Positions 18,991 to 60,818 of a stretch of DNA of 64,000 nucleotides are shown here, piece by piece. The stretch is taken from assembly GCA_038087875.1 (NCBI GenBank), contig CM075992.1, forward strand, positions 7,316,001 through 7,380,000, written 5' to 3'. A program made the position numbers and the translations under genes. Within the stretch, counting starts at the first letter, position 1, and every line of letters starts with the position of its first letter. Under the pieces are notes generated by a model. The model was not told the origin of the DNA. It was given only the letters and a program-made list of their open reading frames with translations, and made no database searches. Source of the DNA: Malacoraja senta (lineage: Eukaryota).

Positions 18991-19065
18991 TGACACAGTT
19001 GCTGAACGAAACGAAGACGTCAGTTGATGATATTTGGAGGCTCGCTTTGGAGATAAACATTATAG
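18991..19065 (+). CDS. Gene 2 neck-repeat exon (75 nt, phase 1-1)
   Basis: tttccatttcag acceptor, gtgcgt donor; xTQLLNETKTSVDDIWRLALEINII; same size and pattern as gene 3 repeats. Confidence 0.8.
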
Positions 19066-27229: not shown

Positions 27230-27320
27230 ATGGAGCTGGATGTCATCGGGGAGACCATCAGTGCATCGTGCCCTGATCAGCAGAGTGTGGAAGTGAAGGA
27301 GAGAAAGGAGAGCAGACCAG
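27230..27320 (+). CDS. Gene 3 cytoplasmic-tail exon (91 nt coding)
   Basis: ACCATGG Kozak; MELDVIGETISASCPDQQSVEVKERKESRP; CCAG|gtacac; upstream acceptor ctctcttcccaaag ends at 27204. Confidence 0.82.
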
Positions 27321-30300
27321 GTACACAGTGACAGCCAGCTCCTGGAATGGGATTAGGTTCCCTGAGAAGTCATTTGTTGAATAATTGACATCAGACTATA
27401 AACCTTCAGATCAATTACTGCAGTGAAAGCTCACTTTCTAATTGGATGCAAAGCTTTCTTGCCAAACAATCTCCCTTGTTGATTGATTGTAAGAAAAAGA
27501 GCCTTTGGCCCACTGAATCCAAGCCGAACATAGATAACCCGTTCACACTTGTTTTATGTTATCCCACTTTAGCATCCACTCCCTGCACACTAAGGCAGTT
27601 TACAGAGGGCCAATTCACTTATAACCCTGTAGAAATAAAAAGCTGCCGATGCTGGTTAATACACAGAAGGAGACAATGTGTTGGAGTAGCTCAGCAGGTC
27701 AGGCAGCATCTCTTGAGGACATGGATAGGTGAAATTTCAGGTCGAGACCCTTCGTCAGAATTCTTTTTCTGAAACGTCACCTATACATGTTCTCCAGAGA
27801 TGCTCCCTGACCTGCTGAGTTACTCCAGCATTTTGTGTCCTTTCGCCAAAAACCGATAGCCTGTAAATTACAACCCTGCATGTCTTTGTGATGTGGGAGG
27901 AAACTGAAGCACCCGCAGTAAACTCTCAGCTGGGAAAACGTGCAAACTCCGCACTGACAGCAGCCAAGATCACGATCGCACCCGGGTCTCTGGTGCTGTG
28001 AGGAGCAGTTCTACCAGCTGCGTCACTTCGTTTTTACAAAGACAGCACAGTTACACAATGAAAAAAGTGATGGTGTCAGAGGTTGTTCACATAACTCCAT
28101 TTTCCTGCTGGTGATTAACACAGAGTGAACGGGTTAACACAGAGTGAACAGAGTAATGGGGTCAGAAATCCTTCCAATTCCCTCTGTATAACTAGCAGTG
28201 ATACGCATGGTTAATCTGGTGAGACTGGCTTGAGTCTGTTTAGTGGGAGCTTGGTCCTGTTGTCAAAGCCCGACTAGATACAAAATCTATAACCTACTTC
28301 AGCAAGTCAAGTCATGTCAAGTCAAGAGAGTTTATTGTCATGTGTCCCAGATAGGACAATGAAATTCTTGCTTGCTGCAGCACAACAGAATATTGTAAGC
28401 ATAAATACAGATCAGTTCAGTGTGTCTATATACCATAGACCATATATATACACATAAATAAACTGATAAAGTGCAATAGGCTGTTATAGTTCAGAGTTTG
28501 TTTGATGGCGAGTTTAACAGCCTGATGGCTGTGGGGAAGTAGCTCTTCCTCAACCTGGATGTACCAGATTTCAGGCTCCTGTACCTTCTACCTGATGGCA
28601 GCGGAGAGATGAGTGCGTGGCCAGGATGGTGTGGGTCCTTGATGATGTTGGCAGCCTTTTTGAGGCAGCGACTGCGATAGATCCCTTCGATGATAGGGAG
28701 GTCAGAGCCGATGATGGACTGGGCAGTGGTCACAACTTTCTGCATTCTTTTCCGCTACTGGACGCTCAAGTTGCCGAACCAAGCCACGATGCAACCAGTC
28801 AGCACGCTCTCTAATGTGTACCTGTAGAAGTTCGAGAGAGTCCTCTTTGACATACCGACTCTCCGAAATCTTCTCAGGAGGTAGAGGCGCTGATGTGCTT
28901 TAGATTTAGCAGAAGATTTAGCTGGAACCTGAGGGACATCTTTTTCACACAGGATTGGCAGAATAAAATTATACGCAACTACCGCAACTTTCAACACCGA
29001 GCACGATTTCCAAACCACTTTCCTTGCTCCCTCCAGTCTTCATTTTGTCACTTTGCAGGTCGAAGATCAGAACCTGCCAGAGGATGCCGTCAGCCTTTTG
29101 TCATCTTTCTCTTGGGCCTCTCCATTCTGCTGTCTGCAGGCATTCTCGTCGCTGGAGTCTTCCTATGTAAGTACTGCGGCCTTCTGCGAAGGGAGGGAAC
29201 TGGCACAGGAATTTCTGGAGGACCATATGGAGATGGAGCTAGAGCTGGAGATGGTGATGGAGCTGGAGATGGAGCTGGTGATGGAGCTGGAGATGGAGCT
29301 AGAGCTAGAGCTGGAGATGGAGCTGGTGATGGAGCTGGAGATGGAGCTAGAGCTAGTGCTGGAGATGGAGCTGGTGATGGAGCTGGAGATGGAGCTAGAG
29401 CTAGAGCTGGAAATGGAGCTGGAGATGAAGATGGAGCTAGAGCTAGAGCTGGAGATGGAGCTGGAGATGGAGCTGAAGCTAGAGCTAGAGCTAGCTCCTG
29501 ACTACGGGTGCTGTCTGTACGGAGTTTGTACATTCTCCCTGTGACCACATGAGGTATTTCCTCTCAAACTCCAAAGATGGCCAGATTTGCAGATCGATTG
29601 TCGTCTGTAAAATTGTGAATTCTCCCTAGTGTATAGGATAGTGCTAGTGTACGGGGTGATCGCTGGTGGTGCGGACTCGATGGGCCGGAGGGCCTGTTTC
29701 CGAGCTGTATCTCTAAAGTCCAAAAGTCGAAAGAAAGAAGAATGACTGAGGAAATATAGGAGAAAAGGAAATGTAGAGAGGCAAGAAAAGATGAAAGATC
29801 ATTGGAGGCACAAGAGAAAAAATGCAGCAGGAGGAACAAAGTCCTTCAGCATCTGTGGAGTGAAATGGACAGTTGATGTTTTGTGTCAGGATCCTTCTGC
29901 TGGACTGAAAGACTAGAGGGTAAGCAGCTAGTGACCAGTATAATGAAGTAGAGAGAGGGGTGGGTTAAAGAGAGCAGGTAATAGGTGGATACAAAATGCT
30001 GGAGTAACTCAGTGGGACAGGCAGCATATCTGGAGAGAAGGAATGGGTGCCGTTTTGGGTCGAGACCCTTCTTCAGACTCGACCCGAAACATCACCAATT
30101 CCTTCTCTCCAGAGGTGCTGCCTGTCCCGCAGAGCTAAACCAGCATTTTGTGTCTACCGTCGATGTAAACCAGCATCTGCAGTCCTTTCCTACACATGTA
30201 ATAGGTGGATATAGAGCACAGAAGAATACGGCACAGCGATAGGCCCTTCAGCCCACAACGTCCATGGTGAACATGTTGTCAAGCTAATCTAAGTTAAACT

Positions 30301-33300
30301 TCTGCTGCACGTGATCCATATTCCTACATTCCCCGCATGTCCATGTGCCTATCCAAAAGCCTCTGAAATGCCACTGTTCAATGGTTGAATGATTCAATGA
30401 TTCAATGATACTCCATTGTCACATGTACCTGGGTACAGAGAAATTCTTTGCTTTTGCACGCAATACACAACGTGCACAAAATGGTCGCCACATTTCCGGT
30501 GCCAACAAAGTTACACAAGTACTGGTTACAGTGCTTGGATCTGCCGCCACCACCACCACCCCTGGTGATAAGGGGTTGATCCTGGCCGCTCTGTGCCACA
30601 GGATGGGGCTTAGATCTGGGATTTGCCAGCCAGTGCGAACACCAGGTCTCAGCCAGACATGGGGCTTTAGTGATCACCTTGAGGTCAGCAAAAGGGTTAA
30701 CTGGAAACAGGAACAATATCAAACCGTGTGAAAATGACCCTGTGTCAAACCGCCAACCCCCTCCAAAAAATGTCCAAATATTTTCCCCTCCATCCCTGTC
30801 TCCTTCACCATATTCCTTGCTCCCACCTTTCCTCATCACTTTTCCCCATTGTTTCGTTTCACATCTTTCTTTCCTTCTGTCCCTCCTTTATTTCCCCATT
30901 CCCACTATCCTCCATCCACTCTACCTCTCTTATCTCCACTCTTCCCTCATCCACTTTCCATTCCCCTCTCTGCACTGAACCTCCTCTGATTTCTCATTCA
31001 GTCTGAGGAAGGGTCTCGACCCGAAACGTCACCTGTCCATGTTCTCTAGAGATGTTGTCTGACCTGCTGATCTACTCCAGCACTTTGTGCCTTTTTCCCT
31101 GTGCCTCGTTCCATCGCCCCTCTCATCGCCTCCCATTCTCCTCCCACCCCGTGCCCTCTCTCTACATCCTCCAACTCTGCTCTACATCCTCTCTTTACCT
31201 TCCTCACCTCTTCTCTTTCTCTTTCCCCATGTTCCTCTCCTACCTCTCCCCTACTCTCGCCACCCCTTCCCCTTTCCCTCCCCGTCTCTCCCTCCGCCCT
31301 CTTCTCTCCTCTCTCCATTACCAGTGCTGCTTTATCTCGGAGTGTAACCTGACCGATTGTTTCTTGTCAGTTGGACGGAGATAAAATCTGAGTCTCTGGA
31401 GTTGATTACACCGGTTCCACTGCTGTGAACTCTAAATCTATTTTCCATTTCAGTTACACAAATGTTCAGTGAAATAAGAAACGCTCAAGTGGAACTGTCC
31501 CAGCTCAAGAACAACAGTAAGTGTTGAGCGACTGCAAAGGGGTTCTGTGTGGCAGCCTCACACTCAATCCTCAAAGCCATAGGGCATCAAGCTTTTCCAA
31601 GATGCAGATGGGACAGGAGATGTCCCTTTATCATGAGTTCCTGCAGGTGGAACGGGTTGGATATTTTTAAGGCAGAGATGGAGAGATTCTTGATCAGTAC
31701 GGGTGTTAGGGGACAGGGGGAGAAGGCAGGAGAATGGGGTTGAGAGGGAAAGATAGATCAGCCATGATTGAATAGCAGAGTAGACTAGATGGGCCGAATG
31801 GCCTAATTCTGCTCCTGTCACTTATGAACTTACGAACATGGTGACACAGCGGCGCATCAGGTAGAGCTGCTGCCTCACAGCGACACAAACCCGAGTTCAA
31901 TCCTGACCTCGGGTGCTATCTGTGCGGAGTTTGCACGTTCTCCCTGCAAGCATGTGGGTTAGCTCCACTGCTTGGGTTTCTTCCCACATTACAAAGGTTT
32001 GTGGGTTAATTGGCCTCTGTAAGATTACCCCGAGTGTGGAGGGTTGATGAGTAAATGGGATAATATAAAGTGACTGGGTGATCAGTGGTCAGCATGGACT
32101 CAGTGGGCCGAAGGGCCCGCTTCAAAGCTGCATCTGTAAACTGAAGTTAACTGAGCGTGAGGGGGGGGGGGTGTCAAACACAGTCACTGTGTAAAGGGAA
32201 GAGCAGGGTATTAGCTGCATTACCTCAGGCCAATGCACTACAGAGCTGCAACTCCAAGCATCCACCCTGCAGAACATAGAACAGCTCAACAAAGGAACAG
32301 GCCCTTCAGCCCACAATGTCCATGCCGACCATAATGCCAGATTAAATCAATTGATTCTGCCTGTACATGATCCATATCCCTCCGTTCCCTGCATATCTAT
32401 GTTCCTATCTAAAATCCTCTTCAATATCTGTTAAAATTGTTTAATTTGGCATCATATCTGCCTCCACCACTACCCCTGGCCCCCACCATCCTCTGTGCAA
32501 AGAACTTGCCCTGCACATCTACATCAAATTGTTCACCCTCTCATATTATAGATGTGGCCCCTACTGTTGGACATTTCCATCCTGGGAAAAGGATTCTGAC
32601 TGTCTACCCTATCTATGCCTCTCAGAATTTTACATAATTCTATGAAGTCTCCCTTCAACATCTGACCTTCCAGAGAAATCAATCTAACCTCTCCCTGTAA
32701 CAGAAACCCTTTGATCCAGAAGGCATTCAGGTAAACATCATCTTCACCCTCTGAAGAAGGGTCTCGACCCGAAACGTCGCCTATTTTCTTCGCTCCATAG
32801 ATGCTGCCTCACCCGCTGAGTTTCTCCAGCATTTTTGTCTACCTTCACCCTCTGTAAAGCCTCTTCATTATCATTGCCAATGGTTCCCATTCAAAATTCT
32901 CGTTCACGTGGTCTTGAGATCCAAAGTAGAACACATCAGAAGGGAACCCATGCACTTAGAGGAAGATTATGGCCATCACCCTGATTTTCCTATTTGAAGT
33001 TCTTTTTGCAAGTATGTTCAGAGACTTTCCACACCCAAACAAGATATTGTACTTTGCAGAGGTTTTGCCTGCTTCTCTCCAATCAACACATTCTGATTTA
33101 ATTTCTTCCTTGTTGCTTCATCATCACTGGGTCCAAAACCTGGTACAACGGGGCAGCACGGTGGTGCAGTGGTAGAGTTGATGCCTCTTAGCGCCAGAGA
33201 CCCGGGTTCGATCCTGACTACGGGTGCTGTCTGTACAAAGTTTGTACGTTTTACCCGTGACGTGCTTGGGTTTTCTCCAGGATCTCTGATTTCCTACCAC

Positions 33301-36300
33301 ATTCCAAAGACGTACAGGTTCGTAGGATACTTGGCTTGGTATAAATGTGAATTATCCCTAGTGTGCGTAGGATACTGTATGTGTGTGGGGATCACTGGTC
33401 TGCACGGACTCGGTGGGCCGAAGGGCCTGTTTCCGAGCTGCATCTCTAAACTAAGCTAAACTAAGCCTGGCCCAATAGCATTATGGAAACATCTTCCCCA
33501 CATGACCTCCAGTGGTTGAAGAAGATGGCTCAATATAACCTCCGTCAGGTCAGTTCGGAGTGGGTAATAGATGGTGGTAAGGTCCCCAAGGGAAGGGAAT
33601 GAAATAATCCTGGAATAAGTGGCCCATGCAGGGAATATCCCTGTGGTGAATTGGGTGGCGTTCGCCTGTGCAAGTCAGGGGTCTGTTTGGGGCGATGTTA
33701 GTCATGGAGTAATAGATTTGTACTGTATTGAAATAGGCCCTTCTGCCCATCACATCCATGCTGACCTTTTTGCCCATTTACACAAATGCCTGTATTAAGA
33801 CTACAGCTTTTTATGCCTTGCCTTATTCACCTATTCAAGTACTTGTCTAAATGCCTCTGGTTGAATCTGATCCCAACCCTTTCTCTGGCAGTGCATTCCA
33901 GATATTGAACACTCTCCGTGTATTCAATAGAGAGTTAGATTTAGCTCTTAGGGCTAATGGTATCAAGAGATATGGGGAGAAAGCAGGAACGGGGTACTGA
34001 TATTGGATGATCAGCCATGATCATATTGAGTGGCAGTGCTGGCTTGAAGGGCCGAATGGCCTACTCCTGCACCTATTGTCTATATTTCTATATATAAAAC
34101 CTTCCCCTCAGATCCTCTTTAAAACTCCTCCCCCTCACCTTCAATGTATCCCTTGTTTTTGATACCCAAACTATGGGAAAATAGATTCTAACTATCTACC
34201 CTATCTATGCCTCTCATTATTTTATGTACCTTTATCAGACAGCAGCTATCAATAATTAGTTCCTCTTTATGTTCCAGTATTGCAGATGTTCACCGAAATA
34301 AGAAGCTCAAACTCCAACTTTGTACTAGAACGCTCACAGATAAAAGACAAAGGTAAGTGTTGAATTCTGAAACAGTTAAAGTCAATCCTCATATAATTGA
34401 TGTGGGCTGTTGCCTTCCCTTCTAAATTATGAATGTTTGCGTCACTGCAGAACTAAAATGAATGTATTATCATTATATTAGATCCAGTCTCTTTGCTTGC
34501 ATTTTCTGCAAAACTTTACAATCCCTCTTTTACTGTGCCCTTACGGTAGCTTCTCAAAGGACAGTCATGTTGGATTTAATCAGGTATCATTTGAACTCTA
34601 CTGTATGGGCGGCAGGATGGCACAGCGGTAGAGTTGCTGCCTCACAGCACCAGAGACTCAGGTTCGATCCTGACTATGGGTGCGGTCTGTACGTTCTCTC
34701 CGTGATCTAATTTCAAGTAACCCTTGCATTCCCTCTCTCTCCATCACTTCCCCACCCTAGTTGTCCTACCAGTTTCACTCTTTGTATCTTTTCGTTATCA
34801 CCTCCTCCACAGCCAACAATGGACCATTGTGGGCTCTTTGGCTGTCTGTGACGTCTCTGATTTGTCCTGTACCTTTTCATAACTCTAATTACCCTCTCCC
34901 CTGACTCTCAGTCCGAAGAAGAGTCTCGACCAGAAACATCGCCTATTCCTTCTCTCCAGAGATGCTGCCTGACCCGCTGAGCTACTCTAGCATTTTGTGT
35001 CTATCTTCAGGGTATTTGTTCTATGGGCAATCCGTTCACTTTGGAACAGAGAAATCCTGAGAGAAACTGGTAAAGGGAGCTAGATAAACAACTGAAAGGA
35101 AAGACTTCATACTCAATGGGCAGTTGGTGGATGTTGAGATGACCCAACTTGATTTTACCCAGGTAGACAAAAATGCTGGGGAAACTCAGCGGGTGAGGCA
35201 GCATCTATGAAGCGAAGGAATAGGTGACGTTTCGGGTCGAGACCCTTCTTCAGACCTAGTATAGACATGAAAGGCTGAGTGGCCTTCCTCTACGCTGTTG
35301 TCATTCTGTAATTCCTCTGGGACATCTCCCCTGGTCCTTACCCAAGTGAGAACTTACATATTTTTCCTTTTCTAGCCTGGGACCCATCTGTTTGACCCAG
35401 ACCTCACTTTAGTAGAAGTAAATTTAACTTTAAACGGTTCAGCCTCAAATTTTAAATACATTTCAGTTCCAAATGTGTCTATCCTGAGGGTGATTACAAA
35501 AGCTCTGTTTTTATTTCAGTTTTGCAGATGTTCGGTGAAATAAGCACTTCCCAGGCCGGTTTTACCATCGAGCTTTCAAAGCTACAGAGCACCAGTAAGT
35601 GTGGTAATGGTATTGGTTCATGGTTGTCTCGTGTAGTGAGATACGGTGAAAAGCTACAAAATTGTACCATATCAAGCCAGACACAAGTACAACAGGTGTT
35701 GCAAAGAAAGAAATACCAGAGCAGCATATGGTGTTCCAGCTACAGAGAAAGTGTAGGGTCTACAATGAGGTTGGTTGGAAGATCGGAATTACACCTTAGC
35801 CCATGGGAGGAAAGTTCAGTAGTCTGGTAACAACGGGGAAGTCCAAATCTGGTCGCAATGGAAGCTTTTAAGCTTTTGTATCTACTGCCTGAGGGGAGAG
35901 GGGAGAAGAGGGAATGACTGGGGTGATAGTGGAGTCAGGGGATATGGGGAGAAGGGAGTAATGGGGTACTGATTGTGGATGATCAGCTATGATCACAGTG
36001 AATGGCGGTGCTGGCTCAAAGGGCCGAATGGCCTACTCCTGCACCTATGGTCTATTGTATATTGACATTATGGGAACATAGATGCAGTCCCTGTATCTTT
36101 GTTGCTCTAGACAAGCAGCGGAAATAGCCATCACAGTGTGATGCAGCAGAGGCTCCCTATAATCCCACAGAGCAAATTGTCCAGATTGGGAGTCATGGAG
36201 GCACTAAAATGCAAGGTGTGCAAGAGGCCAAAGCCCACTCCTGGATCTCCGCACAGAATGCAGGCTAACAGCACTGGGGTGCTGCCGAGGATTTGCTGCT

Positions 36301-45300: not shown

Positions 45301-46742
45301 TGAATCAGTCTAAAGAAAGGTCTCGACCCAAAATGTCACCCGTTCCTTCTAGCCAGAGACGCTGATTGTCCTGCTGAGTTACTCCAGCACTTTGTGTCTA
45401 TCTTTGGTTTAAACCAGCATCTGCTGTTCCTTCCTACACAATACTTTGAAAGAGAGGGCATGGACTGGGGCCCCTTCGGCCCAATGAGTCCACGCTGACC
45501 ATTGATCACCCGTTCACACGGGTTCTATGTTATCCCACTTTCCCCTCCATTCCCTGCAGACTAGGGGCAATTGATAGAGGCCAATTAACCTACAACACTG
45601 ACATCTATTTACACTGAAAAGGATTTAGCAGAGATTAAACTAATACTCTTCTCCTTTCAGTTACACAGATGTTCAGTGAAATAAGTAGCTCACATGCAGA
45701 TTTGAAAATCGAGCTTTCACAGATGAAGTATAACAGTACGTATTTATCGATNNNNNNNNNNNNNNNNNNNNNNNNNNNNNNNNNNNNNNNNNNNNNNNNN
45801 NNNNNNNNNNNNNNNNNNNNNNNNNNNNNNNNNNNNNNNNNNNNNNNNNNNNNNNNNNNNNNNNNNNNNNNNNNNNNNNNNNNNNNNNNNNNNNNNNNNN
45901 NNNNNNNNNNNNNNNNNNNNNNAAGTTTAAAAACTTGTACTATCTTTGATCAGACTTTACTGGACTTTATCCATCACTAAAGATTATTCACATTATCCCC
46001 TTTATCATGTATCTGTACATTGTAGATAGCTTGATTGTAATCATGTATTGTCTCTCCGCTAACTGGATAGCACACAACAAAAGCTTTTCACTGTACCTCG
46101 GTACACGTGACAATAAACTAAACTGAAATTAAACCCCAAAAAAGTAATTTAAACAAATTTTATGATACCCTTCCCCACAGCAGTAATTTTGATGAGATAT
46201 TTGCTTGGGCGGGAATTACATTTTGTGGCATTGCAACTTAGACCTTTGTTTTGATTCCAGTCGCACAGATGTTCACTGAAATAAGAAACTCTCAGTCTGA
46301 CTTCAAGATCGAGTTTTCACCGCTGCAGCATAAGAGTGAGTTGTTCATCTTCAGGCATCCCTTAAAATGCCGCGATTTTATTTTGAACCATTCTGCCTCT
46401 CGAAGCTTCTGCGATTTTAACCTTCTGTTTGTTGTTGTGCAGTGTGGTGTGTTAAAAACAATGCACTGCAGTAATGCACCCTCACTGTGGCACAGTGGCA
46501 CAGGTGGTAGAGCTGCTGCCTCGCAGCGCCAGAGTCCCGGGCACGATCCTGACCTCGGTTGCTGTCTGTGTGAAATTTGCACGTTCTGCCTGTGACCACG
46601 TGGGTTTCATTGGCCTCTGTAACAGATTCTTCCCTACAGCCATCAGGCTATTAAACACTGCAACCTTCAAATAAGCTCTAAACAACATAGACTTGGGGGC
46701 ATTGGTTTTGTCTATTATTATTATTATTACTTTTAGTAATAT

Positions 46743-46799
<57 letters not shown>

Positions 46800-52700: not shown

Positions 52701-55700
52701 ATGTCGGGGCGGCCCAGCCTGAGGCTGAAGACGGCACGGTACTCACGTGAGGGTGGCTGGGACGGTGTTCTGGCGGTGGTGGCCTGAGTCCGGGGTTCGG
52801 CCGCGGGCCAGCGGCTGCGTCTGCAGGACTGGTGGGCGGCAGCTTCGACCACCCCGGGCCGCGGTGTTTGAGCCGCGGGAAACATCGCCCGGGGGGTGTC
52901 GCCTCAGCGCAGAGGGAGAAGAGGAGGGAAGAGACTGCAGACCTAAGACTTTTGCCTCCATCACAGTGAGGAGATGTTCGGTGGACTCACTGTGGTGGAT
53001 GTTAATATGTGTTTATTGTTGTTTTATGTATGACTTGCAATTTCGCAATTTCGTTCAGACTTCGGTCTGAATGACAATAAAGGCTAACTGATCTATCTGA
53101 TTTAGAACGGAGACGAGGAAACACTTTTTCTCACAGTTGTGAGTCTGTGGAATTCTCTGCCTCAGAGGGCGGTGGAGGCAGGTTCTCTGGATGCTTTCAA
53201 GAGAGAGCTGTGTAGGGTTCTTAAAGATAGCGGAGTCAGGGGATATGGGGAGAAGGCAGGAACAGGGTACTGATTGGGGATGATCAGCCATGATCACATT
53301 GAATGGCGGTGCTGGCTCGAAGGGCCGAATGGACTATTGTCTATTGTTTATCTTGAATGGGACAGGGGGAAAGATATGGGTGACGAGAGAGCTGCCCTGT
53401 GGAGAGCCTGAGTAAACACGATGGGCCGAATGGACCTTCTTCGGTGGTGTGACCATTCCACGATTCTGTCAACTGCCCATCGATTTCTGAGCAGTGCTAA
53501 TTTCACACTGAATTATTACACAAAGTGCACTGATTTTTTTCTTTATTTCAGTTGCAGAGAACTTCAGCAAAGTAGAGATGTCGCACGAAGAACTAAAGAG
53601 AGAAATTTCACAAGTGAAGATTCAAAGTAGGTTGTCAGCAATATCTTAATATTGGATCAGAGCTACAATATGAATGCGTTGGATCAGAGATATGATATGA
53701 TAGCATCGGGACATTATATCAGCAGATCAGAGGTACAATCTGATGGCATCAATGATACGATCTCACAGTGTCTGAGATGCAATCCACTGGCATCGATTGA
53801 CCTGCCAACCGGAAATCAACCGGAAATCAGAACACCCTGGGCAAACCCACGCAGTCACAGGGCGGACATGCAAACTCCACACAGACAGCATCCGGGATCA
53901 AGGATGAACCCAGGTCTCTGGAGCTGTGATAGACACAAAGTGTTGGTGTAACTCAATGAGTGAGGCAGCATCTCTGCTCGCTATAACGCCTGCTGCGTCA
54001 AAGGGTGCGAAACCGTGAAATAATGGGGCATGAAATGCAGTTGCTGGGGGATGTGCGATGGGAATGAAGGCCTTAATTTTCTAATTTCCTCTTAGTTCCA
54101 CAGCACCTTCGTGACATACGGACCTCCCAGACTGAGCTCAGAATGGACCAGTCTCAAATGAAGAGCCACTGTGAGTGTTGAACCCCCGTAAGAGATTCGG
54201 TGATCTTATCCTCGTGCTTTGTGGCCCCTCGCTCTGTGCGAAATTTACAGACACAGTTCAGTGTGGATTGTGACCCCTGCCCAGTGATCTATCTCCACCC
54301 TCATTTTGGTTACAATTGACAATAGACAATAGACAATATTGTCTTTGGAGGGTTCCCTCCATTACAATGGAGGGTTCCCTCCGGATGCAAGTCAAAAACA
54401 GGGACAAGAAGGGCGGCAAGGTGGTGCAGTGGTAGAGTTGCTGCCTTACAGCGCCAGAGACCCGGTTCGATTCTGACAACGGGTGCTATCAATACGGAGT
54501 TTGTAATTTCTCCCCGTGACCGCGTGGGTTTTTCCCGGGTACTCTGGTTCCCTCCCATTCTCCAAAGACGTACAGGTTTGTTGGCTTCGGTAAAGATTAT
54601 ATATTGTCCCCAATGTGTAGGATAGTGCCAGTGTATGGGGCTCTCTGGTCAGTGCGGACCCGGTGGGCCGAAGGGCCTGTTTCCATGCTGTATCTCTAAA
54701 CTAAATTAAACTAAACATGAAGTTGCACTGGTTGTTGGTGGATGTTGAGTGTGGGGAGAGAGAAGGAAAGGAGGGGCATTGACAAGTGAAGAAATGCATT
54801 GCCTGACATTGAAGCCCCCATTGTATGTAGAAAGGTGCTGCATAAAGGGGTGAATGGGCAGCAGACAAGAGAACATGTAGCAAAGTGGCGGAATAACTCA
54901 ACGGAGAACATGGATAGGTGACGTTTCGGGTTGAGACATTGGAATCAATTGAGAGTGGGATGAGGAAGAGGACAAGGTGAGGGTGATGCATGGCTGTGGG
55001 GAAACTGGGCGGTGTACTGGGTGTTTCATTAGTTTAATTTATTGTCATGTGTACCAAAGTATAGTGAAAATCTTTTTGTTGCATGCTACCCAGTCAGCGC
55101 AAAGATTATATATGATTACAATCAAGCAGTCCACAGTGTGTAGATATGTGATAAACAGAATTATTGCAAGATAAAGTCAGAAGAAGTACAATTAAAGATG
55201 TTTTCTTCTGTTGCAGCTGATCCCCAGGAGAGGTCCTCTGTCTCTTTCCAAGCGTGAGATTTTTAGTCTAGTTTTAGAGATACAGCACGTAAACAGGCCC
55301 ACCGAGTCCACGCCAACCAGCGATCCCCGCACATTAACACTATCCTACACCCACTAGGGACAATTTACACATACACCACGCCAAGTTACCCACAAACCTG
55401 TACGTCTTGGCAGTGTGGGAGGAAAGCGAAGATCTGGGAGGAAACCCAGGCAGGTCAAGGGGAGAACGACAAACTCCATACAGACAGCACCCGTCGTCGG
55501 GATCGAACCTGGGTCTCCGTCGCTGCAAGCGATGTAAGGCAGCAACTTTACCGCTGCGCCACCGTGCCACCAAGGGGTGTTCTGAAAGATGTTCGGAAAG
55601 AGATTGGGCAGGAGTTGGAGGACCTCAGGTCGCCTCATGGAGTGGGCTGAGGTTCAGCGGAGAGAAGCACCAACCTGCTGGTGCTTCTTCCTCAGTTTAA

Positions 55701-58700
55701 TATTTCTATTCATTTGACAATAGTCTTATCACTAAAACAATTTTTTTTCAATTATTGACAACAACTTTCAACATTGTTAAAACTGATTCGGGTGCAAGGT
55801 CCTGTTGGGATAGTGCCTGAGATCTGCTCGCCCAGGGTCTGATGGTGGGTCCTAGGATCGCTCAGCTCAGTCAGCTCTCTGTACATGGCACAGTGGAGGC
55901 AGGGGGACGGAGATCAGAGCAACATCGGGGCAGAGTCAGGACAGAAGGCTGAACCCGGCTCGGCTTGACTTATTACTCCCAGCCTGCTCTCCCACTGAAC
56001 CCAAACATGTACTGACCCCAAACACCTGCTGACCCCAAACACCTGCCGACCCCAAACACCTGCCGACCCCAAACACCTGCCAACCCCAAACACCTGCTGA
56101 CCCCAAACACCTGCTGACCCCAAACACCTGCTGACCCTAAACACCTGCTGACCCCAAACACCTGCTGACCCCAAACACCTGCTGACCCCAAACACCTGCT
56201 GACCCCAAACACCTGCTGACCCCAAAGATCTATTGAACCCAAAGAACTACTGACCCCAAACACCTGCTGACCCCAAACACCTAAGATAGACACAAAAGCT
56301 GGAGTAACTCAGCAGGTCAGGCAGCGTCGCTGGAAATAAAAGGAATAGGAGACGTTTCGGGTGGAGACCCTTCATCATCATCTCCAGCTTTTTATGTCTA
56401 TCTTCGGTGTAAACTAGCATCTGCAGTTCTTTCCTACACTAACCCAAACACTTACTGGACCCAATCACTGACAGTAGGATCATTGATGGTAACCCATTGG
56501 TAACTCTGATCACAAATTACTATTGTAAATATGTTCTCTTCCCGCAATCACTTTGAAAACTTTGCTTCTCTTTCAGTTTCTCAGATCTTCAATGAGATGA
56601 GGCACTCGCAGGCTGGTTTCAACATGGAACTTTCGCAGATGAACAGCAACAGTAAGCACTACAAGCTTGTCAAATACTCCTTTGTATCCTCAACTCAAGC
56701 AGCTCTTTGTGTTTTTTCGGAAGCCCCTGGTGCCTTTCCAATATCTGCCGTGGACAATCCTGTCCTTGCTCGAACAATCCTCGCTCTGTCTGACGGGCTC
56801 CTCATGACACCATCTCATGCGCCAACGCATTCCTTCCTGTGTTTCAACTTCACCTTCCTCAGTTAACGGCCGTTCGTGTCCACTGTTGATGCCAGCTATT
56901 TATGACTGCATGAGTTCTCCCACTCTTTTTCAACTTTGCGCACGCCCACGCGATGTCTATGGCCTCAGATCAAAGCGGAAATTGCAGAGGTGTTGCTGCT
57001 GACCTCTTGTTATGCCCTGAACAAGCCCATCAGTAGCCAGTGCCTTCCTCATCTGCCCAGTCACTGCTGAACTCCAATTGAATCTAAGTCAGTGAGTTCC
57101 CACAGTTACGAACAGGACTTTTGATCGGTACAAAGTGTTGGAATAATGTTTGTATGTTTGGGTTAGTTTAATTTAGTTTAGTTTAGTTTAGTTTAGTTTA
57201 ATTTGAACCCTGGTCTCTGGCGCTGTAAGGCAGCAACTCTACCGCTATGCCCCTGTGCTGCCCTTTGTTAATTTAGCCCTTTGTAAGTTTAGTTTAATTT
57301 AGTTTAGTTAAGTTTATTTTAGTTAGTTTAGTATAGTTTTATTCAGTTCGAACCCTCGTCTCTTGCGCTGTAAGGCAGCAACTCTACCGCTATGCCATGG
57401 TGCCGCCCTTTGTTGGTTCAGTTTAGTTCAGTTTAGATTGCACTTGGGTCACTGCCGCTGTAAGACAGCAATTGTACTGCTGGGTCACTGTGTCGCCCCT
57501 TGTTAGTTTAGTTTAGTTTAGTTTAGCTTAGTTTAGGTTTAATTTCGTTTTGGGATATAGCGTGGAAACAGGCCCTGAGACCCAGGGTGCAAAGATCCAC
57601 AGGAATGTTGCCTAGATTAGAAGGCTTGAGTTATAAAGAGAGACTGAATAATATGCTGTGACTGCTTTCACTGGAGTGAAGGAGAATGAGGGGTGATCTT
57701 ACGGTGATTTATAAAATTATGAGGGGCATTGCTATGAAAGATAGTCATAGTCTGTCCTAAACCAGAGGGCATACGTTTAAGCTGAGAGAGGAAATATTTA
57801 AAAGGGATCTGAGGGGCAGGTTTTTCACACAGAGGATAGCGTGTGCAGGATGTATGGAGTTTGTACATTCTCCCCGTGACCTGCGTGGGTTTTCTCTGAG
57901 ATCTTTGGTTTCCTCCCACACTCCAAAGATGTACTGGTTTGTAGGTTAATTGGCTGGGTAAATGTAAAAAATTGTCCCTAGTGGGTGTGGGATAGTGTTA
58001 ATATGCGGGGATCGCTGGTCGGTGCGGACCCGGTGGGCCGAAGGGCCTGTTTCCGCGCTGTATCTCTGAACTAAAAAAAAGTGGGCATTTGGAATAAGCT
58101 GTCAAAGGAGATTGCAGACTCGGGTATAATTGCAACATTTAAAAGATATTTGGATATGTGCATGGATGAAAGGTTTAGCAGGACATGGGCCAAATGCAGG
58201 GAAATGTAACTAGTGTAGAAAGGCATCTTGATCAGTGTGGACGAGTTGGGCTGAAGGCTTGTTTCCATGCTGTCTGCTTCTCAGAATCCATTTTCACGGG
58301 CAGTATTCCATTAACCTTCCAACAAATGTTTAATTAACTTTTTCTTTAAATGTTACACAGTAAACTAATAATGTTTCCAGTAAACCCAATAACTTTAAAG
58401 GCAGTAGTTTAGTTTAGTGTAGTTTATAGATACAACACGGAAACAGGCCCCATCAGTCAACCGAGTCCGCACCGACCAGCGATCCCCGCACACTAACACT
58501 ATCCTACACACTCAAGATACAATTTACATTTATACCAAGCCAATTAACCTACAAACCTGTACGTCTTTGGAGAGTGGGAAGAAACTCGGAGAAAACCCAC
58601 GCAGGTCACGGGGGAGAACGTACAGACAAGCACCCGTAGTCAGGATTGAACCCGGGTCTCTGACACTGTAAGTCAGTAGCTCTACCGCCACCGTGCCACC

Positions 58701-60818
58701 CAAGTACGGGAAACAGAACCAGGTTATGTTCAAGGAAGCAGAGCTACCAACCCAGGCGATTTAAAAAAAGTGAAGGAACCAGGGCCTTGGTGAGTGGAAG
58801 GAGGTGGGAAACTGGAGCTCGTCAAGTTGGATGGGAGTACAGAGAACAGAAGCTGGTGAGGCAGGTGTTGAAATGGAATGGATTATTGGAGTTTTACGCT
58901 AGTTGAGACACAAAATGCTGGTGTGACTCAGTGTCTGGAGAAAAGAGCCCCATATCTGAGGAAGGATGTGCTGGCGCTGGAGAAGGTCCAGAGGAGGTTT
59001 ACGAGAATGTTCCCAGGAATGAGTGGATTAACATATGATGAGCGTTTGACGGCACTGGGCCTGTACTCGCTGGAGTTTAGGATGACTCATTAGGGGACCT
59101 CATTGAAACTTACCAAATAGTAAAAGACCTGGATGCAGTGGATGTGGAGATGATGTTTCCACTAGAGGAAGAGTCTAGGACCAGAGGTCATAGCCTCAGA
59201 TCGTAGGACGTTCATTTGGGAAAGCGATGAGGAGGAATTTATTTCGTCAGACGGTGGTGAATCTGTGGAATTCATTGCCACAGAAGGCTGTGGAGGGCAG
59301 GTCAATAGATATTTTTAAGGCATAGATAGATAGATTCTTAATTAGTACAAGTGTCAGGGATTATGGGGAGAAGGCAGGAGAATGGGGTCAGGAGGGAAAC
59401 ATAGATCAGCCATGGTTGAATGGTGGAGTAGACTTGATGGGCTGAATGGCCTAATTCTGTTCCTATGAAAGCATGAAAAGGAATAGGTGACGTTTTGGGC
59501 CGAGACCCTTCTTCAGACTCTAGTTTGTTGTGGACGACTGCATATGACAATAATTCTGACAGTGGCTTGGTGCATGGATAGCAACAGCAAAAACACAGCT
59601 GTGGTGAAGCTTCCTTTTTGGTGACCGCAAGGAGGAGGAAGTGAGGGTGACCTCAGAACCAAACTCTCCACAGATGAGTCAAGTGCATCGAAGATATCTT
59701 CCTGTTGCCAGGCACTGTAATAGCGATACTCAAGATATATGTGCAGCAAGGAACTGCAGATGCTGGTTTATACCAAAGATAGGCACAAAGTGCTGGAGGA
59801 ACTCATTGTGTCAGTCAGTATTTCTGGAGATAAAGAATGTTTCGGGTCGGACTCCTTCAGTCTGTGGGCATGGTGATTTGAACATGTCTAAATTTGGAGA
59901 TGAAGTTTGTCCTCCAAGACATTTAAGGATAGCATAGCACATTGGTGCAGCTGGTAGATCTATTGACTCACAGTGCCAGAGTCCCAAGTTCGATCCTGAC
60001 CTCAGGTGCTATCTGTTACCTGTTTGCATCTTCGCCTTGTGACCTTACGTGTTTGATCCAGGCGCTCCGGTTTCCCCCCCACAACCCAAAGACACGAGGG
60101 TTTGTCGGTTAATTCTTTACATTACACCTAGTGTCTGGGGAGTCCTTGAGAAAGTGGGATAATATAGAACTAGTACGAACGGGTGATCAATATTCTGTGC
60201 GGGTTCTATGGGCCGAGGGGTCTGTTTCCATGCTATATCTTGCAATCGATCAAAGGCGACCCGAAACGTTACCCAATCCTTCTCTCCAGAGATGCCGCCT
60301 GTCCCGCAGATACAGTGAGTTACTCCAGCATTTTGTGTCTATCTTCGATACATTGACTGAGCTTGATCACCCCTACAAGGTCATTGAATTTCTGGTGCCT
60401 TTGGAGATAAGACCATGGCATTGACCTTAGGTCTATCTGCCCACCACCTACAGATGTTGTGAATTTTCCCTGTATTTCCTCCACTTCCTCCATTGACTTC
60501 TACTCTGTCTTATTCAGTTCCCCTCAGCATCCTCTTTCCTCCTGAAAGAACCCTACGTTCTTTACAATCACTAACTTCTCACCCTCCCCCACAATTTCTG
60601 CCCCATCCTCACAGCACCGCAGAACTTTTTCTATGGCAACCAGAGCTGTAAATAGTAAAGAATACTCAAACACCGGATGAGTTATTTCCCTAATTTGCGC
60701 CTCTAATGCCAGTGCTTTCACGACTTGTTTTCTGCTTTGCTTTCAGTGACTGGTTTCTCGGAAGAGATGAGGACCTCACTTTCTGGGTTCCGGGCTGACC
60801 TCACCCAGTTGAAGAACA
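27230..60818 (+). CDS. Gene 3: type II membrane protein with at least 16 exon-encoded coiled-coil neck repeats, probable CD209/CD23-like C-type lectin (3' end beyond window)
   Basis: 18 GT-AG exons forming one open frame: tail, TM, 16 neck exons. Tail and neck exons are homologous in size and pattern to those of adjacent lectin gene 2. Lectin identity is inferred since no CTLD exon is in the window. Confidence 0.88.
28440..28900 (-). mobile_element. Rex1/Babar-like non-LTR retrotransposon 3' fragment
   Basis: KAHQRLYLLRR...ESVLTGCIVAWFGN and IIKDPHHPGHALISPLPSGRRYRSL...SYFPTAIRLLN. Confidence 0.85.
29059..29166 (+). CDS. Gene 3 transmembrane (signal-anchor) exon (108 nt)
   Basis: GRRSEPARGCRQPFVIFLLGLSILLSAGILVAGVFL; basic residues before a hydrophobic run (type II topology); cactttgcag / gtaagt. 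Confidence 0.92.
29227..29496. repeat. Hexamer-based minisatellite (GGAGCT/GGAGAT/AGAGCT/GGTGAT)
   Basis: Direct inspection; starts 60 bp after the TM exon donor. Confidence 0.95.
31454..31516 (+). CDS. Gene 3 neck exon N1 (63 nt)
   Basis: FTQMFSEIRNAQVELSQLKNN; ttccatttcag / gtaagt. Confidence 0.92.
33150..33464 (+). mobile_element. HE1/V-SINE-like SINE
   Basis: gggcagcacggtggtgcagtggtagag...ggttcgatcc...ctctaaactaagc. Confidence 0.9.
34278..34352 (+). CDS. Gene 3 neck exon N2 (75 nt)
   Basis: ILQMFTEIRSSNSNFVLERSQIKDK; gttccag / gtaagt. Confidence 0.92.
35520..35594 (+). CDS. Gene 3 neck exon N3 (75 nt)
   Basis: VLQMFGEISTSQAGFTIELSKLQST; ttatttcag / gtaagt. Confidence 0.92.
36603..36677 (+). 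CDS. Gene 3 neck exon N4 (75 nt)
   Basis: IVQRFGEKRRSQDDDKMEVSEIRDV; ttccatttcag / gtgagt. Confidence 0.9.
38391..38681 (+). mobile_element. HE1/V-SINE-like SINE
   Basis: Full head, core, tail. Confidence 0.9.
38789..38857 (+). CDS. Gene 3 neck exon N5 (69 nt)
   Basis: ATQRFSQITTSQADIKTILSQLN; cttcttctcag / gtaagg. Confidence 0.9.
39730..40470 (-). mobile_element. pol: Endogenous retrovirus pol (RT) fragment, class I (gamma/epsilon-like), degenerate
   Basis: LFPAPKPG..EWRLVQDLRAIN, LHLDSQYLFAFTYEGRQYTW..L.QG..HSPTIF, YVDN (for YVDD), MRAFLGLVNFSRQWIPN. Confidence 0.88.
40482..40940 (-). mobile_element. Penelope-like element 3' end (GIY-YIG endonuclease C-terminus plus terminal repeat)
   Basis: Minus strand 40791-40920 reads LSVLGLLHCQSEASRKLEEQYLIFCLGTLQPNGMNIDFSNFK*, followed by the ctgaagaagggtctcgaccc repeat found throughout the window. 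Confidence 0.82.
40991..41065 (+). CDS. Gene 3 neck exon N6 (75 nt)
   Basis: VTQMFTEIRNSQGVVKMELSQLKTN; ggtttcag / gtgagt. Confidence 0.93.
41142..41448 (-). mobile_element. HE1/V-SINE-like SINE
   Basis: Reverse complement of family consensus. Confidence 0.88.
41659..41918 (-). mobile_element. Gypsy-type LTR (203 bp, 41716-41918) with tRNA-Leu primer-binding sequence and extra 14-bp LTR end; 5-bp TSD
   Basis: TGTA...TACA termini; minus-strand AATAAA at 41755-41760; TGGTGTCAGAAGTGGGATTCGAACCCA directly after the LTR; GATAT at 41654-41658 and 41919-41923. Confidence 0.85.
42021..42376 (+). mobile_element. HE1/V-SINE-like SINE
   Basis: Full head, core, tail. Confidence 0.88.
43265..43339 (+). 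CDS. Gene 3 neck exon N7 (75 nt)
   Basis: LTQKLNDVRNSQVDLKLGMTLMKMN; ctttatttcag / gtgagt. Confidence 0.92.
43845..44150. mobile_element. MITE with ~54-bp terminal inverted repeats, PIF/Harbinger-like; related one-ended copy at ~1906-2210
   Basis: tgtcccaccctcccgagttactcgcg...cttgattca versus tgaatcaag...gagtaactcgggaaagtgggaca; flanked by TAA/TTA. Confidence 0.75.
44315..44389 (+). CDS. Gene 3 neck exon N8 (75 nt)
   Basis: VTQLMPGLRWLQANMNLELSQMKNT; cccttccag / gtaagt. Confidence 0.92.
44465..44872 (-). mobile_element. CR1-like LINE 3' fragment
   Basis: Reverse complement of CR1 ORF2 end and 3' UTR (ctcatccttctaaactccagc; gaattaggccattcggccc). Confidence 0.85.
45661..45735 (+). CDS. Gene 3 neck exon N9 (75 nt)
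   Basis: ITQMFSEISSSHADLKIELSQMKYN; ctcctttcag / gtacgt. Confidence 0.93.
46261..46335 (+). CDS. Gene 3 neck exon N10 (75 nt)
   Basis: IAQMFTEIRNSQSDFKIEFSPLQHK; ttgattccag / gtgagt. Confidence 0.93.
46813..48033 (+). mobile_element. Putative non-autonomous Helitron-like element in a (TA)n tract, with internal duplication and minisatellites
   Basis: 5' TCTATATTACTAAAAG; ~46835-47143 repeated at ~47290-47632; ~39-bp and 48-bp tandem units; CTAG near the 3' end but no clear terminal hairpin. Confidence 0.55.
49542..49616 (+). CDS. Gene 3 neck exon N11 (75 nt)
   Basis: ITQKLKEIGDSQAGCWTELSQMKNG; ttttgtttcag / gtgagt. Confidence 0.92.
49935..50093. repeat. (TTTAG)n microsatellite, SINE-tail type
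   Basis: Direct inspection. Confidence 0.9.
50093..50375 (-). mobile_element. CR1-like LINE 3' end
   Basis: MRKNFFTQRVVNLWNSLPQ, near identical to 7810-8090. Confidence 0.9.
51634..51708 (+). CDS. Gene 3 neck exon N12 (75 nt)
   Basis: IVQKINELRNSQPDLKGAISHLETE; ctcccttgcag / gtgagt. Confidence 0.92.
52250..53085 (+). repeat. Unclassified GC/CpG-rich interspersed element with internal ~39-bp tandem units
   Basis: gcccaagtcggggc(a/g)gcccggcccg about 4 times at 52577-52717; ends gaatgacaataaagg. Confidence 0.55.
53552..53626 (+). CDS. Gene 3 neck exon N13 (75 nt)
   Basis: IAENFSKVEMSHEELKREISQVKIQ; ctttatttcag / gtaggt. Confidence 0.9.
54096..54170 (+). CDS. Gene 3 neck exon N14 (75 nt)
   Basis: IPQHLRDIRTSQTELRMDQSQMKSH; tttcctcttag / gtgagt. 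Confidence 0.9.
54411..54715 (+). mobile_element. HE1/V-SINE-like SINE
   Basis: Full head, core, tail. Confidence 0.9.
55263..55570 (-). mobile_element. HE1/V-SINE-like SINE
   Basis: Reverse complement of family consensus. Confidence 0.88.
55995..56282. repeat. 17-bp minisatellite (GACCCCAAACACCTGCT), about 17 units
   Basis: Direct inspection. Confidence 0.95.
56577..56651 (+). CDS. Gene 3 neck exon N15 (75 nt)
   Basis: FSQIFNEMRHSQAGFNMELSQMNSN; ctctttcag / gtaagc. Confidence 0.93.
58407..58701 (-). mobile_element. HE1/V-SINE-like SINE
   Basis: Reverse complement of family consensus. Confidence 0.88.
58945..59468 (+). mobile_element. CR1-like LINE 3' fragment
   Basis: PYLRKDVLALEKVQRRFTRMFPG...LGLYSLEFR plus 3' UTR. 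Confidence 0.9.
60747..60818 (+). CDS. Gene 3 neck exon N16 (72 nt)
   Basis: MTGFSEEMRTSLSGFRADLTQLKN; ttgctttcag / gtgagt. Confidence 0.9.

What the first reader, a model, noticed from the sequence alone, without database searches (positions are those of the whole stretch)
27230..60818. Type II lectin-like receptor with at least 16 one-repeat-per-exon neck cassettes: a candidate length-tunable stalk
Seen: after the tail and TM exons, 16 small exons lie over 29 kb among TEs, all with AG/GT, all phase 1-1, all stop-free, sized 75 nt (13 exons), 63, 69 and 72 nt. They share the consensus [VI]TQMFxEIRxSQxxLKxELSQ[ML]KxN and total 393 aa. Repeats are strongly diverged yet keep length, frame and hydrophobic register, which indicates purifying selection on an old array. 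Known: human CD209/CLEC4M neck repeats (23 aa) sit in a single exon; CD23/FCER2 has only a few 21-aa repeats on separate exons. Inference: at ~0.15 nm per residue the stalk would be about 59 nm or more, and because any subset of exons can be skipped in frame, splicing could set the reach and oligomer stability of the receptor. The neighbouring paralog (gene 2) has just one such 75-nt exon. I cannot tell from here whether this gene is already annotated.
Basis: partly seen in the sequence, partly recalled or inferred. Interest (0 to 1): 0.92.

Follow-up and report, generated by a model that had tools for sequence, protein, structure and literature searches.

The report
Long-stalk lectin-like receptor, 16 neck exons
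A cartilaginous-fish gene in a cluster of C-type lectin receptor genes builds a very long (about 58 nm) helical stalk from at least 16 tiny one-repeat exons; the exons are real, old, conserved and spliced into RNA, but its sugar-binding head lies outside the window and the idea that splicing tunes stalk length is untested.

Summary
Observation confirmed. On the + strand lie a tail exon (27230-27320), a transmembrane exon (29059-29166) and 16 neck exons (31454-60818). Thirteen are 75 nt; the others are 63, 69 and 72 nt. All have AG/GT boundaries, all are phase 1-1, and together they give an open 459-codon reading frame.

The repeats look old and constrained. Synonymous sites are saturated, replacement sites are conserved, and flanking introns are at random identity. 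The first six exons match whale shark exons one-to-one and in order.

Assembled contigs from two public runs join five consecutive exons base-exactly, including across the 45752-45922 gap.

Short-neck paralogs in sharks and rays carry the same 25-residue repeat between a similar transmembrane segment and a Pfam C-type lectin domain. Two such paralogs lie just upstream in the window.

Two points are not shown. First, this gene's own lectin domain: the window ends first, and none was found in three related shark loci. Second, exon skipping: only all-inclusive contigs were seen.

The closest known cases are the few-exon necks of CD23 and mouse LOX-1. I read this as a new variant of a known kind. 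Only fragmentary "uncharacterized protein" models exist for it in other species. The scan had not noted it on other DNA.

The parts
27230..27320 (+). Exon 1: start codon and 30-residue cytoplasmic tail, ending in phase 1 (donor gtacac)
   Evidence: It resembles the annotated N-terminus of whale shark model P0002 (tblastn E 0.04 and 0.006). It lacks the YQN[IV] motif found in the tails of the short-neck paralogs.
29059..29166 (+). Exon 2: basic juxtamembrane stretch plus a 24-residue transmembrane segment (signal anchor), phase 1-1
   Evidence: tblastn to the transmembrane region of P0013 gives E 1.7e-4. A counterpart exon lies at L001:15101-15190 in whale shark.
31454..31516 (+). Neck exon W1, 63 nt (21 aa)
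   Evidence: Reciprocal best match to whale shark Rt1, which is also 63 nt.
34278..34352 (+). Neck exon W2, 75 nt
   Evidence: Reciprocal best match to whale shark Rt2, 15 of 24 residues identical.
35520..35594 (+). Neck exon W3, 75 nt
   Evidence: Collinear with whale shark Rt3.
36603..36677 (+). Neck exon W4, 75 nt (a weaker profile match)
   Evidence: Collinear with whale shark Rt4.
38789..38857 (+). Neck exon W5, 69 nt. The only neck exon that does not begin with T.
   Evidence: Reciprocal best match to whale shark Rt5.
40991..41065 (+). Neck exon W6, 75 nt
   Evidence: Present in the spliced contigs of X1 and X2. Reciprocal best match to Rt6, 17 of 24 identical.
43265..43339 (+). Neck exon W7, 75 nt
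   Evidence: It fills contig positions 97-170 between W6 and W8. Mismatches at 43296 and 43301 carry that contig's depth.
44315..44389 (+). Neck exon W8, 75 nt
   Evidence: Present in the spliced contigs of X1 and X2.
45661..45735 (+). Neck exon W9, 75 nt, donor gtacgt
   Evidence: In X2 contig positions 247-321, joined directly to W10. Its counterpart is whale shark Rt7, which has the same gtacgt donor.
45752..45922 (.). Assembly gap in the W9-W10 intron
   Evidence: The X2 contig bridges it: W9 is joined to W10 with nothing between them.
46261..46335 (+). Neck exon W10, 75 nt
   Evidence: X2 contig positions 322-396.
49113..49242 (.). Assembly gap in the W10-W11 intron. Not tested; it could hide an exon.
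   Evidence: The stretch laid ended at 46400.
49542..49616 (+). Neck exon W11, 75 nt
51634..51708 (+). Neck exon W12, 75 nt
   Evidence: Reciprocal best match to a repeat of stingray model P0001, 15 of 24 identical.
53552..53626 (+). Neck exon W13, 75 nt
   Evidence: Reciprocal best match to the next repeat of P0001.
54096..54170 (+). Neck exon W14, 75 nt
56577..56651 (+). Neck exon W15, 75 nt
   Evidence: Best matches are in stingray (16 of 24) and horn shark (15 of 24).
60747..60818 (+). Neck exon W16, 72 nt, of the second repeat type (V/M-T-G-x-S-E-E). In short-neck paralogs this type directly precedes the lectin domain.
   Evidence: Reciprocal best match to whale shark Rt8, also 72 nt. The repeat type is seen in P0004, P0013 and P0015.

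Best explanation
This is the 5' two-thirds or more of an expressed, conserved elasmobranch gene. It is a paralog of the CD209 / hepatic-lectin-like type II C-type lectin receptors that sit next to it.

A short cytoplasmic tail and a signal-anchor transmembrane segment are followed by a neck. Ancient exon duplication has expanded that neck to at least 16 one-repeat exons. As far as the evidence goes, the exons are spliced together constitutively.

Each 25-residue module carries seven core positions: 1, 5, 8, 12 (a conserved polar Gln), 15, 19 and 22. That is an 11+7+7 pattern, or 3.57 residues per core position. The 393 residues should therefore form one continuous, weakly supercoiled parallel helical bundle about 58 nm long. 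By inference this bundle oligomerises the receptor and holds its C-terminal head far from the membrane. The head is most likely a C-type lectin domain encoded beyond the window.

Shown: the exons, their phase, splicing of five of them, constraint, orthology, the helical periodicity, and paralogs that have lectin domains. Inferred: oligomer state, rod length, the lectin head and the function.
For: - Exon anatomy and an open 459-codon frame.
- Only + strand copies, with none elsewhere in the window except in the paralog.
- Constraint. Among the 13 full-length exons pS is 0.71 (saturated) and pN is 0.38. Identity is 0.59, 0.68 and 0.40 at codon positions 1, 2 and 3. Introns beyond the splice signals are at about 0.26-0.31 identity.
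- Splicing. The X2 contig (1544 nt, depth 16) places W6, W8, W9 and W10 at positions 21-96, 171-246, 247-321 and 322-396, with W7 filling 97-170. A 678-nt contig in X1 agrees. Unique intron bins have depth 0.
- Family. Among 1.84 billion representatives the repeat profile hits only elasmobranch proteins. P0003, P0004 and P0012 combine tail, transmembrane segment, 2-5 of these repeats and Pfam Lectin_C (E 3.6e-23 to 9e-14).
- Context. Two lectin-domain genes lie upstream on the same strand.
- Orthology. The whale shark locus has the same tail exon, transmembrane exon and 11 neck exons. The collinear pairing W1-W6 with Rt1-Rt6 scores best of all 720 permutations.
- Helix. Hydrophobic periodicity is 3.59 residues, the core positions are tabulated, and AlphaFold2 gives an unbroken helix over residues 70-203 of P0002 with pLDDT 81-89.
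Against: - No lectin-domain exon was found for this gene in 60.8-64 kb. None was found in the whale shark (71 kb), horn shark (114 kb) or cat shark loci either. The two long-neck gene models in public annotation (P0001, P0002) end without a lectin domain.
- The tool labelled runs X1 and X2 'RNA? (probably DNA)', and their exon sequences differ from the window by 1-2 letters per exon. They may come from another individual or a close relative.
- Only 5 of the 16 junction sets were tested. Exon 1 and the transmembrane exon have no RNA support here.
- The structure model is a single-sequence monomer prediction of a relative, not of this protein.
Confidence: 0.7

Rival explanations
1. One reading: the array is a length-tunable stalk. 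Regulated in-frame skipping of subsets of the 16 cassettes sets the reach and oligomer stability of the receptor.
For: - Every exon is symmetric (phase 1-1) and a multiple of 3.
- 15 of 16 neck exons begin with T at codon position 2. Any exon-to-exon junction therefore encodes Phe, Leu, Ile, Met or Val at core position 1.
- Each 25-residue module holds a whole number (7) of core positions, so skipping keeps the register.
- Four of the five N-glycosylation sequons straddle exon junctions.
- The whale shark gene model P0002 omits two neck exons (Rt5, Rt6) and the transmembrane exon, all of which are present in its locus.
- Precedent: mouse CD23b transcripts lacking exon 5 or 6 (PMC3170794), and mouse Olr1 isoforms lacking the neck exons 3-5 (PMC5343826).
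Against: - In two samples the only contigs over W6-W10 include all five exons. The depth in the bins holding W7, W9 and W10 is accounted for by those single contigs.
- Splice sites are uniformly strong.
- Contigs drop rare variants, so this is weak evidence either way.
- A predicted gene model is not a transcript.
- The features listed in favour follow equally well from simple conservation of a duplicated coiled-coil module.
Confidence: 0.15
2. The gene has no lectin head. It encodes a type II membrane protein that is essentially only a long coiled-coil stalk, or a stalk with a different C-terminal domain. It would be derived from a lectin receptor gene that lost or replaced its lectin-domain exons.
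For: - No lectin-domain exon was found downstream of the neck arrays in the window or in three related loci.
- The public models P0001, P0002 and P0005 have no lectin domain.
- The tail has lost the Tyr motif of the paralogs.
Against: - Introns here are 0.5-4 kb, and up to 50 kb in horn shark. All fetched loci end while neck exons are still appearing.
- The X2 contig runs 1148 nt past W10. That leaves room for the remaining neck exons plus about 480-700 nt.
- Every complete family member seen ends in a lectin domain.
Confidence: 0.12
3. The array is a decaying relic or annotation mirage: duplicated exon-like pieces that are no longer a working gene.
For: - Several repeats are strongly diverged (W4, W12 and W16 score weakly).
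- The adjacent gene 1 carries a stop codon in its lectin domain.
Against: - There is no stop codon in any of the 18 exons, and all 34 internal splice dinucleotides are intact.
- There is a purifying-selection signature.
- Exons have one-to-one counterparts in a distant shark.
- Base-exact spliced contigs exist.
Confidence: 0.03

Closest known systems
CD23 / FCER2 (group II C-type lectin receptor)
   Same: Both are type II membrane proteins with an alpha-helical coiled-coil stalk marked by a heptad-repeat pattern that mediates oligomerisation (PMC6791321). Mouse transcripts lacking exon 5 or 6 give functional receptors (PMC3170794). From my own knowledge, not checked here: the CD23 stalk repeats are 21 residues long, each in its own 63-nt exon, with 3 in human and 4 in mouse.
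   Different: Here there are at least 16 exons rather than 3-4. The module is 25 residues (11+7+7) rather than 21 (3 heptads). The stalk is 393 or more residues. The lectin head was not observed. No alternative isoform was observed.
DC-SIGN / L-SIGN (CD209 / CLEC4M)
   Same: Both are type II receptors with a repetitive helical neck whose repeat number matters for function. The elasmobranch short-neck paralogs of this gene are annotated 'CD209 antigen-like'.
   Different: The L-SIGN neck repeats lie within a single exon (exon 4) and vary as a DNA-level tandem-repeat polymorphism (PMC11945572 and PMC3261175, abstracts). Here each repeat is a separate exon, separated by 0.5-4 kb of repeat-rich intron. 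The repeats are old and diverged (mean 35% identity).
LOX-1 / OLR1 of mouse
   Same: Both are type II lectin-like receptors. The mouse neck is spread over exons 3-5, and isoforms lacking the neck exons exist (PMC5343826). One horn shark paralog isoform is even named 'oxidized low-density lipoprotein receptor 1-like'.
   Different: Mouse LOX-1 has three neck exons and human has one, against 16 or more here. The repeat units are not related in sequence.
Elasmobranch 'CD209 antigen-like / hepatic lectin-like' short-neck paralogs (P0003, P0013, P0015, P0017, P0041)
   Same: They share the same tail and transmembrane exon type and the same two neck repeat types. Each repeat sits in its own exon (great white shark locus L006). 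They lie in the same gene cluster.
   Different: They have 1-5 neck exons and a demonstrated lectin domain with EPN and WND motifs. The long-neck gene has 16 or more neck exons, a tail without the Tyr motif, and an unseen C-terminus.

Membership tests
Group II (type II transmembrane) C-type lectin receptors, CD209/CD23/ASGR-like | N-terminal cytoplasmic tail followed by a single signal-anchor transmembrane segment (type II orientation) | tested here: met
   Exon 2 encodes a basic stretch followed by 24 hydrophobic residues. It matches the transmembrane region of CD209-like P0013 (E 1.7e-4) and of P0003, P0020 and P0025. Orientation is inferred from the positive-inside rule.
Group II (type II transmembrane) C-type lectin receptors, CD209/CD23/ASGR-like | Alpha-helical coiled-coil neck between the membrane and the head | tested here: met
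   Hydrophobic periodicity is 3.59 residues over 393 aa. Core positions are conserved. The whale shark relative models as an unbroken helix. Oligomer state was not tested.
Group II (type II transmembrane) C-type lectin receptors, CD209/CD23/ASGR-like | C-terminal C-type lectin domain (Pfam PF00059: Cys framework, WIGL, Ca2+/sugar site EPN or QPD plus WND) | not testable with these tools
   None lies in 60.8-64 kb. The window ends there. None was found in the related loci L001, L002 or L005. It is present in paralogs that share the repeat.
Group II (type II transmembrane) C-type lectin receptors, CD209/CD23/ASGR-like | Location in a tandem cluster of such genes | tested here: met
   Two upstream genes on the same strand have three-exon lectin domains, at 2518-8505 and 21665-24951.
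CD23-type stalk (one repeat per exon) | Each stalk repeat encoded by its own symmetric exon | tested here: met
   16 exons, all phase 1-1.
CD23-type stalk (one repeat per exon) | Repeat unit of 21 residues (three heptads) | tested here: not met
   The unit is 25 residues with seven core positions (11+7+7). Only W1 is 21 residues.
CD23-type stalk (one repeat per exon) | Isoforms that skip stalk exons | tested here: inconclusive
   Only all-inclusive contigs were seen for W6-W10 in two runs, and contigs drop rare forms.
DC-SIGN/L-SIGN-type neck | Near-identical 23-residue repeats within one exon | tested here: not met
   The repeats are in separate exons, with mean pairwise identity of 35% protein and 56% DNA.

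The most novel reading that the evidence does not exclude
The exon array is a combinatorial length code. Regulated skipping of register-neutral 25-residue cassettes gives one gene a family of receptors with stalks from a few nm to about 60 nm or more. The N-glycan pattern would change with the junctions used, because four of the five sequons are created across exon junctions. Reach and avidity could then be set per cell type.
Probability: 0.15. Interest if true: 0.8.

Novelty: new variant of a known kind. Interest (0 to 1): 0.52.

Why it matters
If the C-terminus is a lectin domain, this would, to my knowledge, be the longest repetitive neck in a type II lectin receptor. The comparison with 3-4 exons in CD23 and about 7.5 single-exon repeats in DC-SIGN rests on my own knowledge. 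It would be roughly 58 nm of coiled coil built from modules that have kept their individual identity since before the lineages of this fish and the whale shark split.

It offers a natural test of how stalk length affects glycan capture and receptor spacing. It is also a clean case of a 25-residue (11+7+7) coiled-coil module.

There is a practical point as well. The gene is almost invisible to annotation. Only two fragmentary 'uncharacterized protein' long-neck models turned up among 1.84 billion representative proteins. Arrays of tiny exons in repeat-rich introns are therefore being missed in cartilaginous-fish genomes.

Tried and rejected
- Word-indexed homolog searches with the stingray model P0001 and the horn shark model P0005 returned only the queries themselves.
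- A search with the lectin-domain fragment P0016 returned 29 CD209-like proteins. None was from whale shark and none combined a long neck with a lectin domain.
- The stingray locus could not be fetched because the gene range is 118 kb.
- I looked for an orphan lectin-domain gene just downstream of a long-neck gene:
  - P0016 lies about 580 kb from the horn shark array.
  - P0018 lies about 100 kb away on the other strand in whale shark.
  - The P0041 locus in great white shark is a separate four-neck-exon paralog with no further repeats in its 10 kb upstream.
- The cat shark locus is 40% N.
- A second run search on a 661-nt stretch holding two exons listed only two runs of unknown kind, probably DNA, and not X1 or X2. 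It neither adds to nor detracts from the expression evidence.
- Pfam has no family for the repeat. P0001 and P0002 give only sub-threshold coiled-coil noise.
- The long open frame at 28933-29541 is a (TGGAGC)n tandem repeat in intron 2, not coding sequence.
- I did not submit the spliced 459-residue protein to any search or fold tool, because it has no reference and typing it was ruled out.

Full report
**What is in the sequence**

The window has five N runs. Two fall inside the finding, at 45752-45922 and 49113-49242.

I searched all six-frame open segments with one repeat and then with a profile of the first hits. This gave 13 strong and 3 weaker matches. All are on the + strand between 31.4 and 60.8 kb, and nothing comparable lies on the - strand.

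Every copy is preceded by a pyrimidine tract ending in [ct]ag. The donors are gtaagt (5), gtgagt (7), and gtaagg, gtacgt, gtaggt and gtaagc once each. A script confirmed AG before and GT after each exon.

- Sizes are 13 x 75 nt plus 63, 69 and 72 nt, giving 1179 nt or 393 residues. All are phase 1-1.
- Upstream lie an ATG exon (27230-27320) and an exon encoding a basic stretch plus a 24-residue hydrophobic segment (29059-29166). Both are in compatible phase.
- The 18 exons splice into an open 459-codon frame.
- A DNA profile of exon plus splice sites finds no further copies in the readable window. The one exception is a single neck exon in the upstream gene at 18991-19065.

**The gaps**

Both gaps lie in introns.

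- The first starts 16 nt after the donor of exon 45661-45735. A contig of run X2 joins that exon directly to 46261-46335. The two sides are therefore one transcript, in that order, with no hidden exon in that isoform.
- The second lies in the intron before exon 49542. It could not be tested, because the single read-laying run covered 40900-46400.

**Is it a working gene?**

*Constraint.* I compared the 13 full-length exons pairwise.

- Nucleotide identity is 56%.
- Synonymous sites differ at 0.71 (saturated) and replacement sites at 0.38.
- Identity by codon position is 0.59, 0.68 and 0.40.
- Intron flanks beyond the splice signals are at about 0.26-0.31, which is close to random.

This is the pattern expected of old duplicates kept by purifying selection.

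*Splicing.* Contigs from two public runs (organism A, two samples of one study) carry the exons joined base-exactly.

- The X2 contig is 1544 nt at depth 16. It places W6, W8, W9 and W10 at positions 21-96, 171-246, 247-321 and 322-396. W7 fills positions 97-170.
- A 678-nt contig in X1 shows the same arrangement.
- Unique intron bins have depth 0. Repeat-derived bins reach depths of 10^3 to 10^5.
- The tool flags these two runs 'RNA? (probably DNA)'. Exon-only coverage with exact junctions still means a spliced molecule existed. The alternative of a processed copy in DNA would also require that same spliced RNA.
- The contigs differ from the window by 1-2 letters per exon, so they may come from another individual or a close relative.

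**What family is it?**

A profile of the 16 repeats was run against 1.84 billion representative proteins. It gave 12 hits at E up to 0.001. I looked up eight of them by name, and all eight are from sharks and rays. I judge the other four (P0008-P0011) to be unrelated coiled-coil proteins.

- Two hits are long-neck models. One is stingray P0001 (10 stretches, gene range 118 kb). The other is whale shark P0002 (7 repeats). Both are named 'uncharacterized protein'.
- The others are short-neck proteins named CD209 antigen-like, hepatic lectin-like and similar.
- P0003, P0004 and P0012 combine a tail, a transmembrane segment, 2-5 of these 25-residue repeats and a Pfam C-type lectin domain. EPN and WND motifs are visible in P0003, P0013 and P0015.

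In the window, two such genes lie upstream on the same strand, with lectin-domain exons at 2518-8505 and 21665-24951. The transmembrane exon of the long-neck gene matches theirs.

The N-terminal two-thirds of a group II lectin-receptor architecture is therefore demonstrated. The defining C-terminal domain is not. Nothing lectin-like lies between 60.8 and 64 kb. None was found in the whale shark (71 kb), horn shark (114 kb) or cat shark loci either. All of those loci end while neck exons are still appearing.

The X2 contig runs 1148 nt beyond W10. That is enough for the remaining neck exons plus roughly 480-700 nt. This is compatible with a lectin domain but is not proof of one.

**Age and exon identity**

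The whale shark locus has the same tail exon, a transmembrane exon that its gene model omits, and 11 neck exons.

- W1-W6 pair with whale shark exons 1-6 in order. Even the 63-nt length of the first exon is shared.
- The collinear pairing scores highest of all 720 permutations. Orthologous pairs are 42-71% identical, against a mean of 35% among repeats within the window.
- W9 and its counterpart share the unusual gtacgt donor.
- W16 (72 nt, the second repeat type) matches whale shark exon 8. W12, W13 and W15 have clear counterparts in stingray and horn shark.
- Whale shark has no counterparts for W7, W8, W10, W11 or W14, so exon number differs between lineages.
- Whale shark has three more neck exons after the W16 counterpart. 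The gene in the window therefore probably continues past 64000.

**How the stalk is built**

- Hydrophobic periodicity over the 393 residues peaks at 3.59 residues, close to 25/7 = 3.57.
- Column counts give core positions 1, 5, 8, 15, 19 and 22. Position 12 is a conserved polar Gln, and position 11 is an almost invariant Ser.
- The spacing is 4-3-4-3-4-3-4, which is one 11-residue unit plus two heptads per exon.
- AlphaFold2 on whale shark P0002 (single sequence) gives an unbroken helix across residues 70-203 with pLDDT 81-89. There are no breaks at repeat boundaries in that segment.
- At 0.148-0.15 nm per residue the stalk would be about 58-59 nm. This length is an inference, as is the oligomer state.

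**The tuning idea**

The structure permits skipping.

- All exons are symmetric.
- 15 of 16 neck exons start with T at codon position 2, so any junction encodes a hydrophobic core residue.
- Each module carries a whole number of core positions.
- Four of the five N-glycosylation sequons span exon junctions.

Precedents exist in mouse CD23 (PMC3170794) and mouse Olr1 (PMC5343826). The whale shark model omits two neck exons.

These properties also follow from plain conservation of a duplicated module. The only transcripts seen here include every exon tested. I put functional tuning at about 0.15.

**Comparison and verdict**

The nearest known designs are the few-exon necks of CD23 and mouse LOX-1. 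The single-exon repeat neck of L-SIGN differs in kind (PMC11945572, abstract).

This gene differs in scale (16 or more exons), in module type (25 residues) and in the deep conservation of individual exons. Three literature searches found no description of it.

I class it as a new variant of a known kind. It is real, expressed and under-annotated. The lectin head and the splicing-tuning hypothesis are still open.

Noticed in passing
window 8356-8505 (stop at 8449-8451): The last lectin-domain exon of the most upstream gene has TGA where the Trp of the conserved WND motif should be. It also has an odd insertion before it. The gene is probably a pseudogene, or this is a base error.
   Followed up: partly
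window 13145-13234, 18991-19065, 21665-21799, 22968-23081, 24817-24951: The second gene is a short-neck paralog with a tail exon carrying a YQNI motif and a single 75-nt neck exon. Its lectin domain has QPQ in place of EPN/QPD and WHD in place of WND, which suggests a non-canonical or lost sugar site. Its transmembrane exon was not located and may lie in gap 15432-15670.
   Followed up: partly
window 29228-29494: A (TGGAGC)n tandem repeat with a 48-nt higher-order unit lies 62 nt downstream of the transmembrane exon donor. It creates a long spurious open frame (Met-Glu-Leu runs).
   Followed up: yes
L001:15101-15190, 28637 and 35339 (whale shark): The public whale shark model P0002 omits a transmembrane exon and two neck exons that are present, with good splice sites, in its own locus. 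Four more neck exons lie outside the model. This is either mis-annotation or real exon skipping.
   Followed up: partly
window exon junctions W5/W6, W6/W7, W7/W8 and W15/W16: Four of the five N-x-T sequons of the spliced protein are formed across exon junctions: Asn is the last full codon, x is the split codon, and Thr is the first full codon of the next exon.
   Followed up: no
window 55995-56282: A 17-nt tandem repeat with about 17 copies lies in the intron about 300 nt upstream of neck exon W15.
   Followed up: no
L006 (great white shark), 15491-52624: Another paralog (P0041) has four one-repeat neck exons separated by about 7-8 kb, an extra acidic linker exon and three lectin-domain exons. 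One repeat per exon therefore appears to be the rule across this elasmobranch family.
   Followed up: partly
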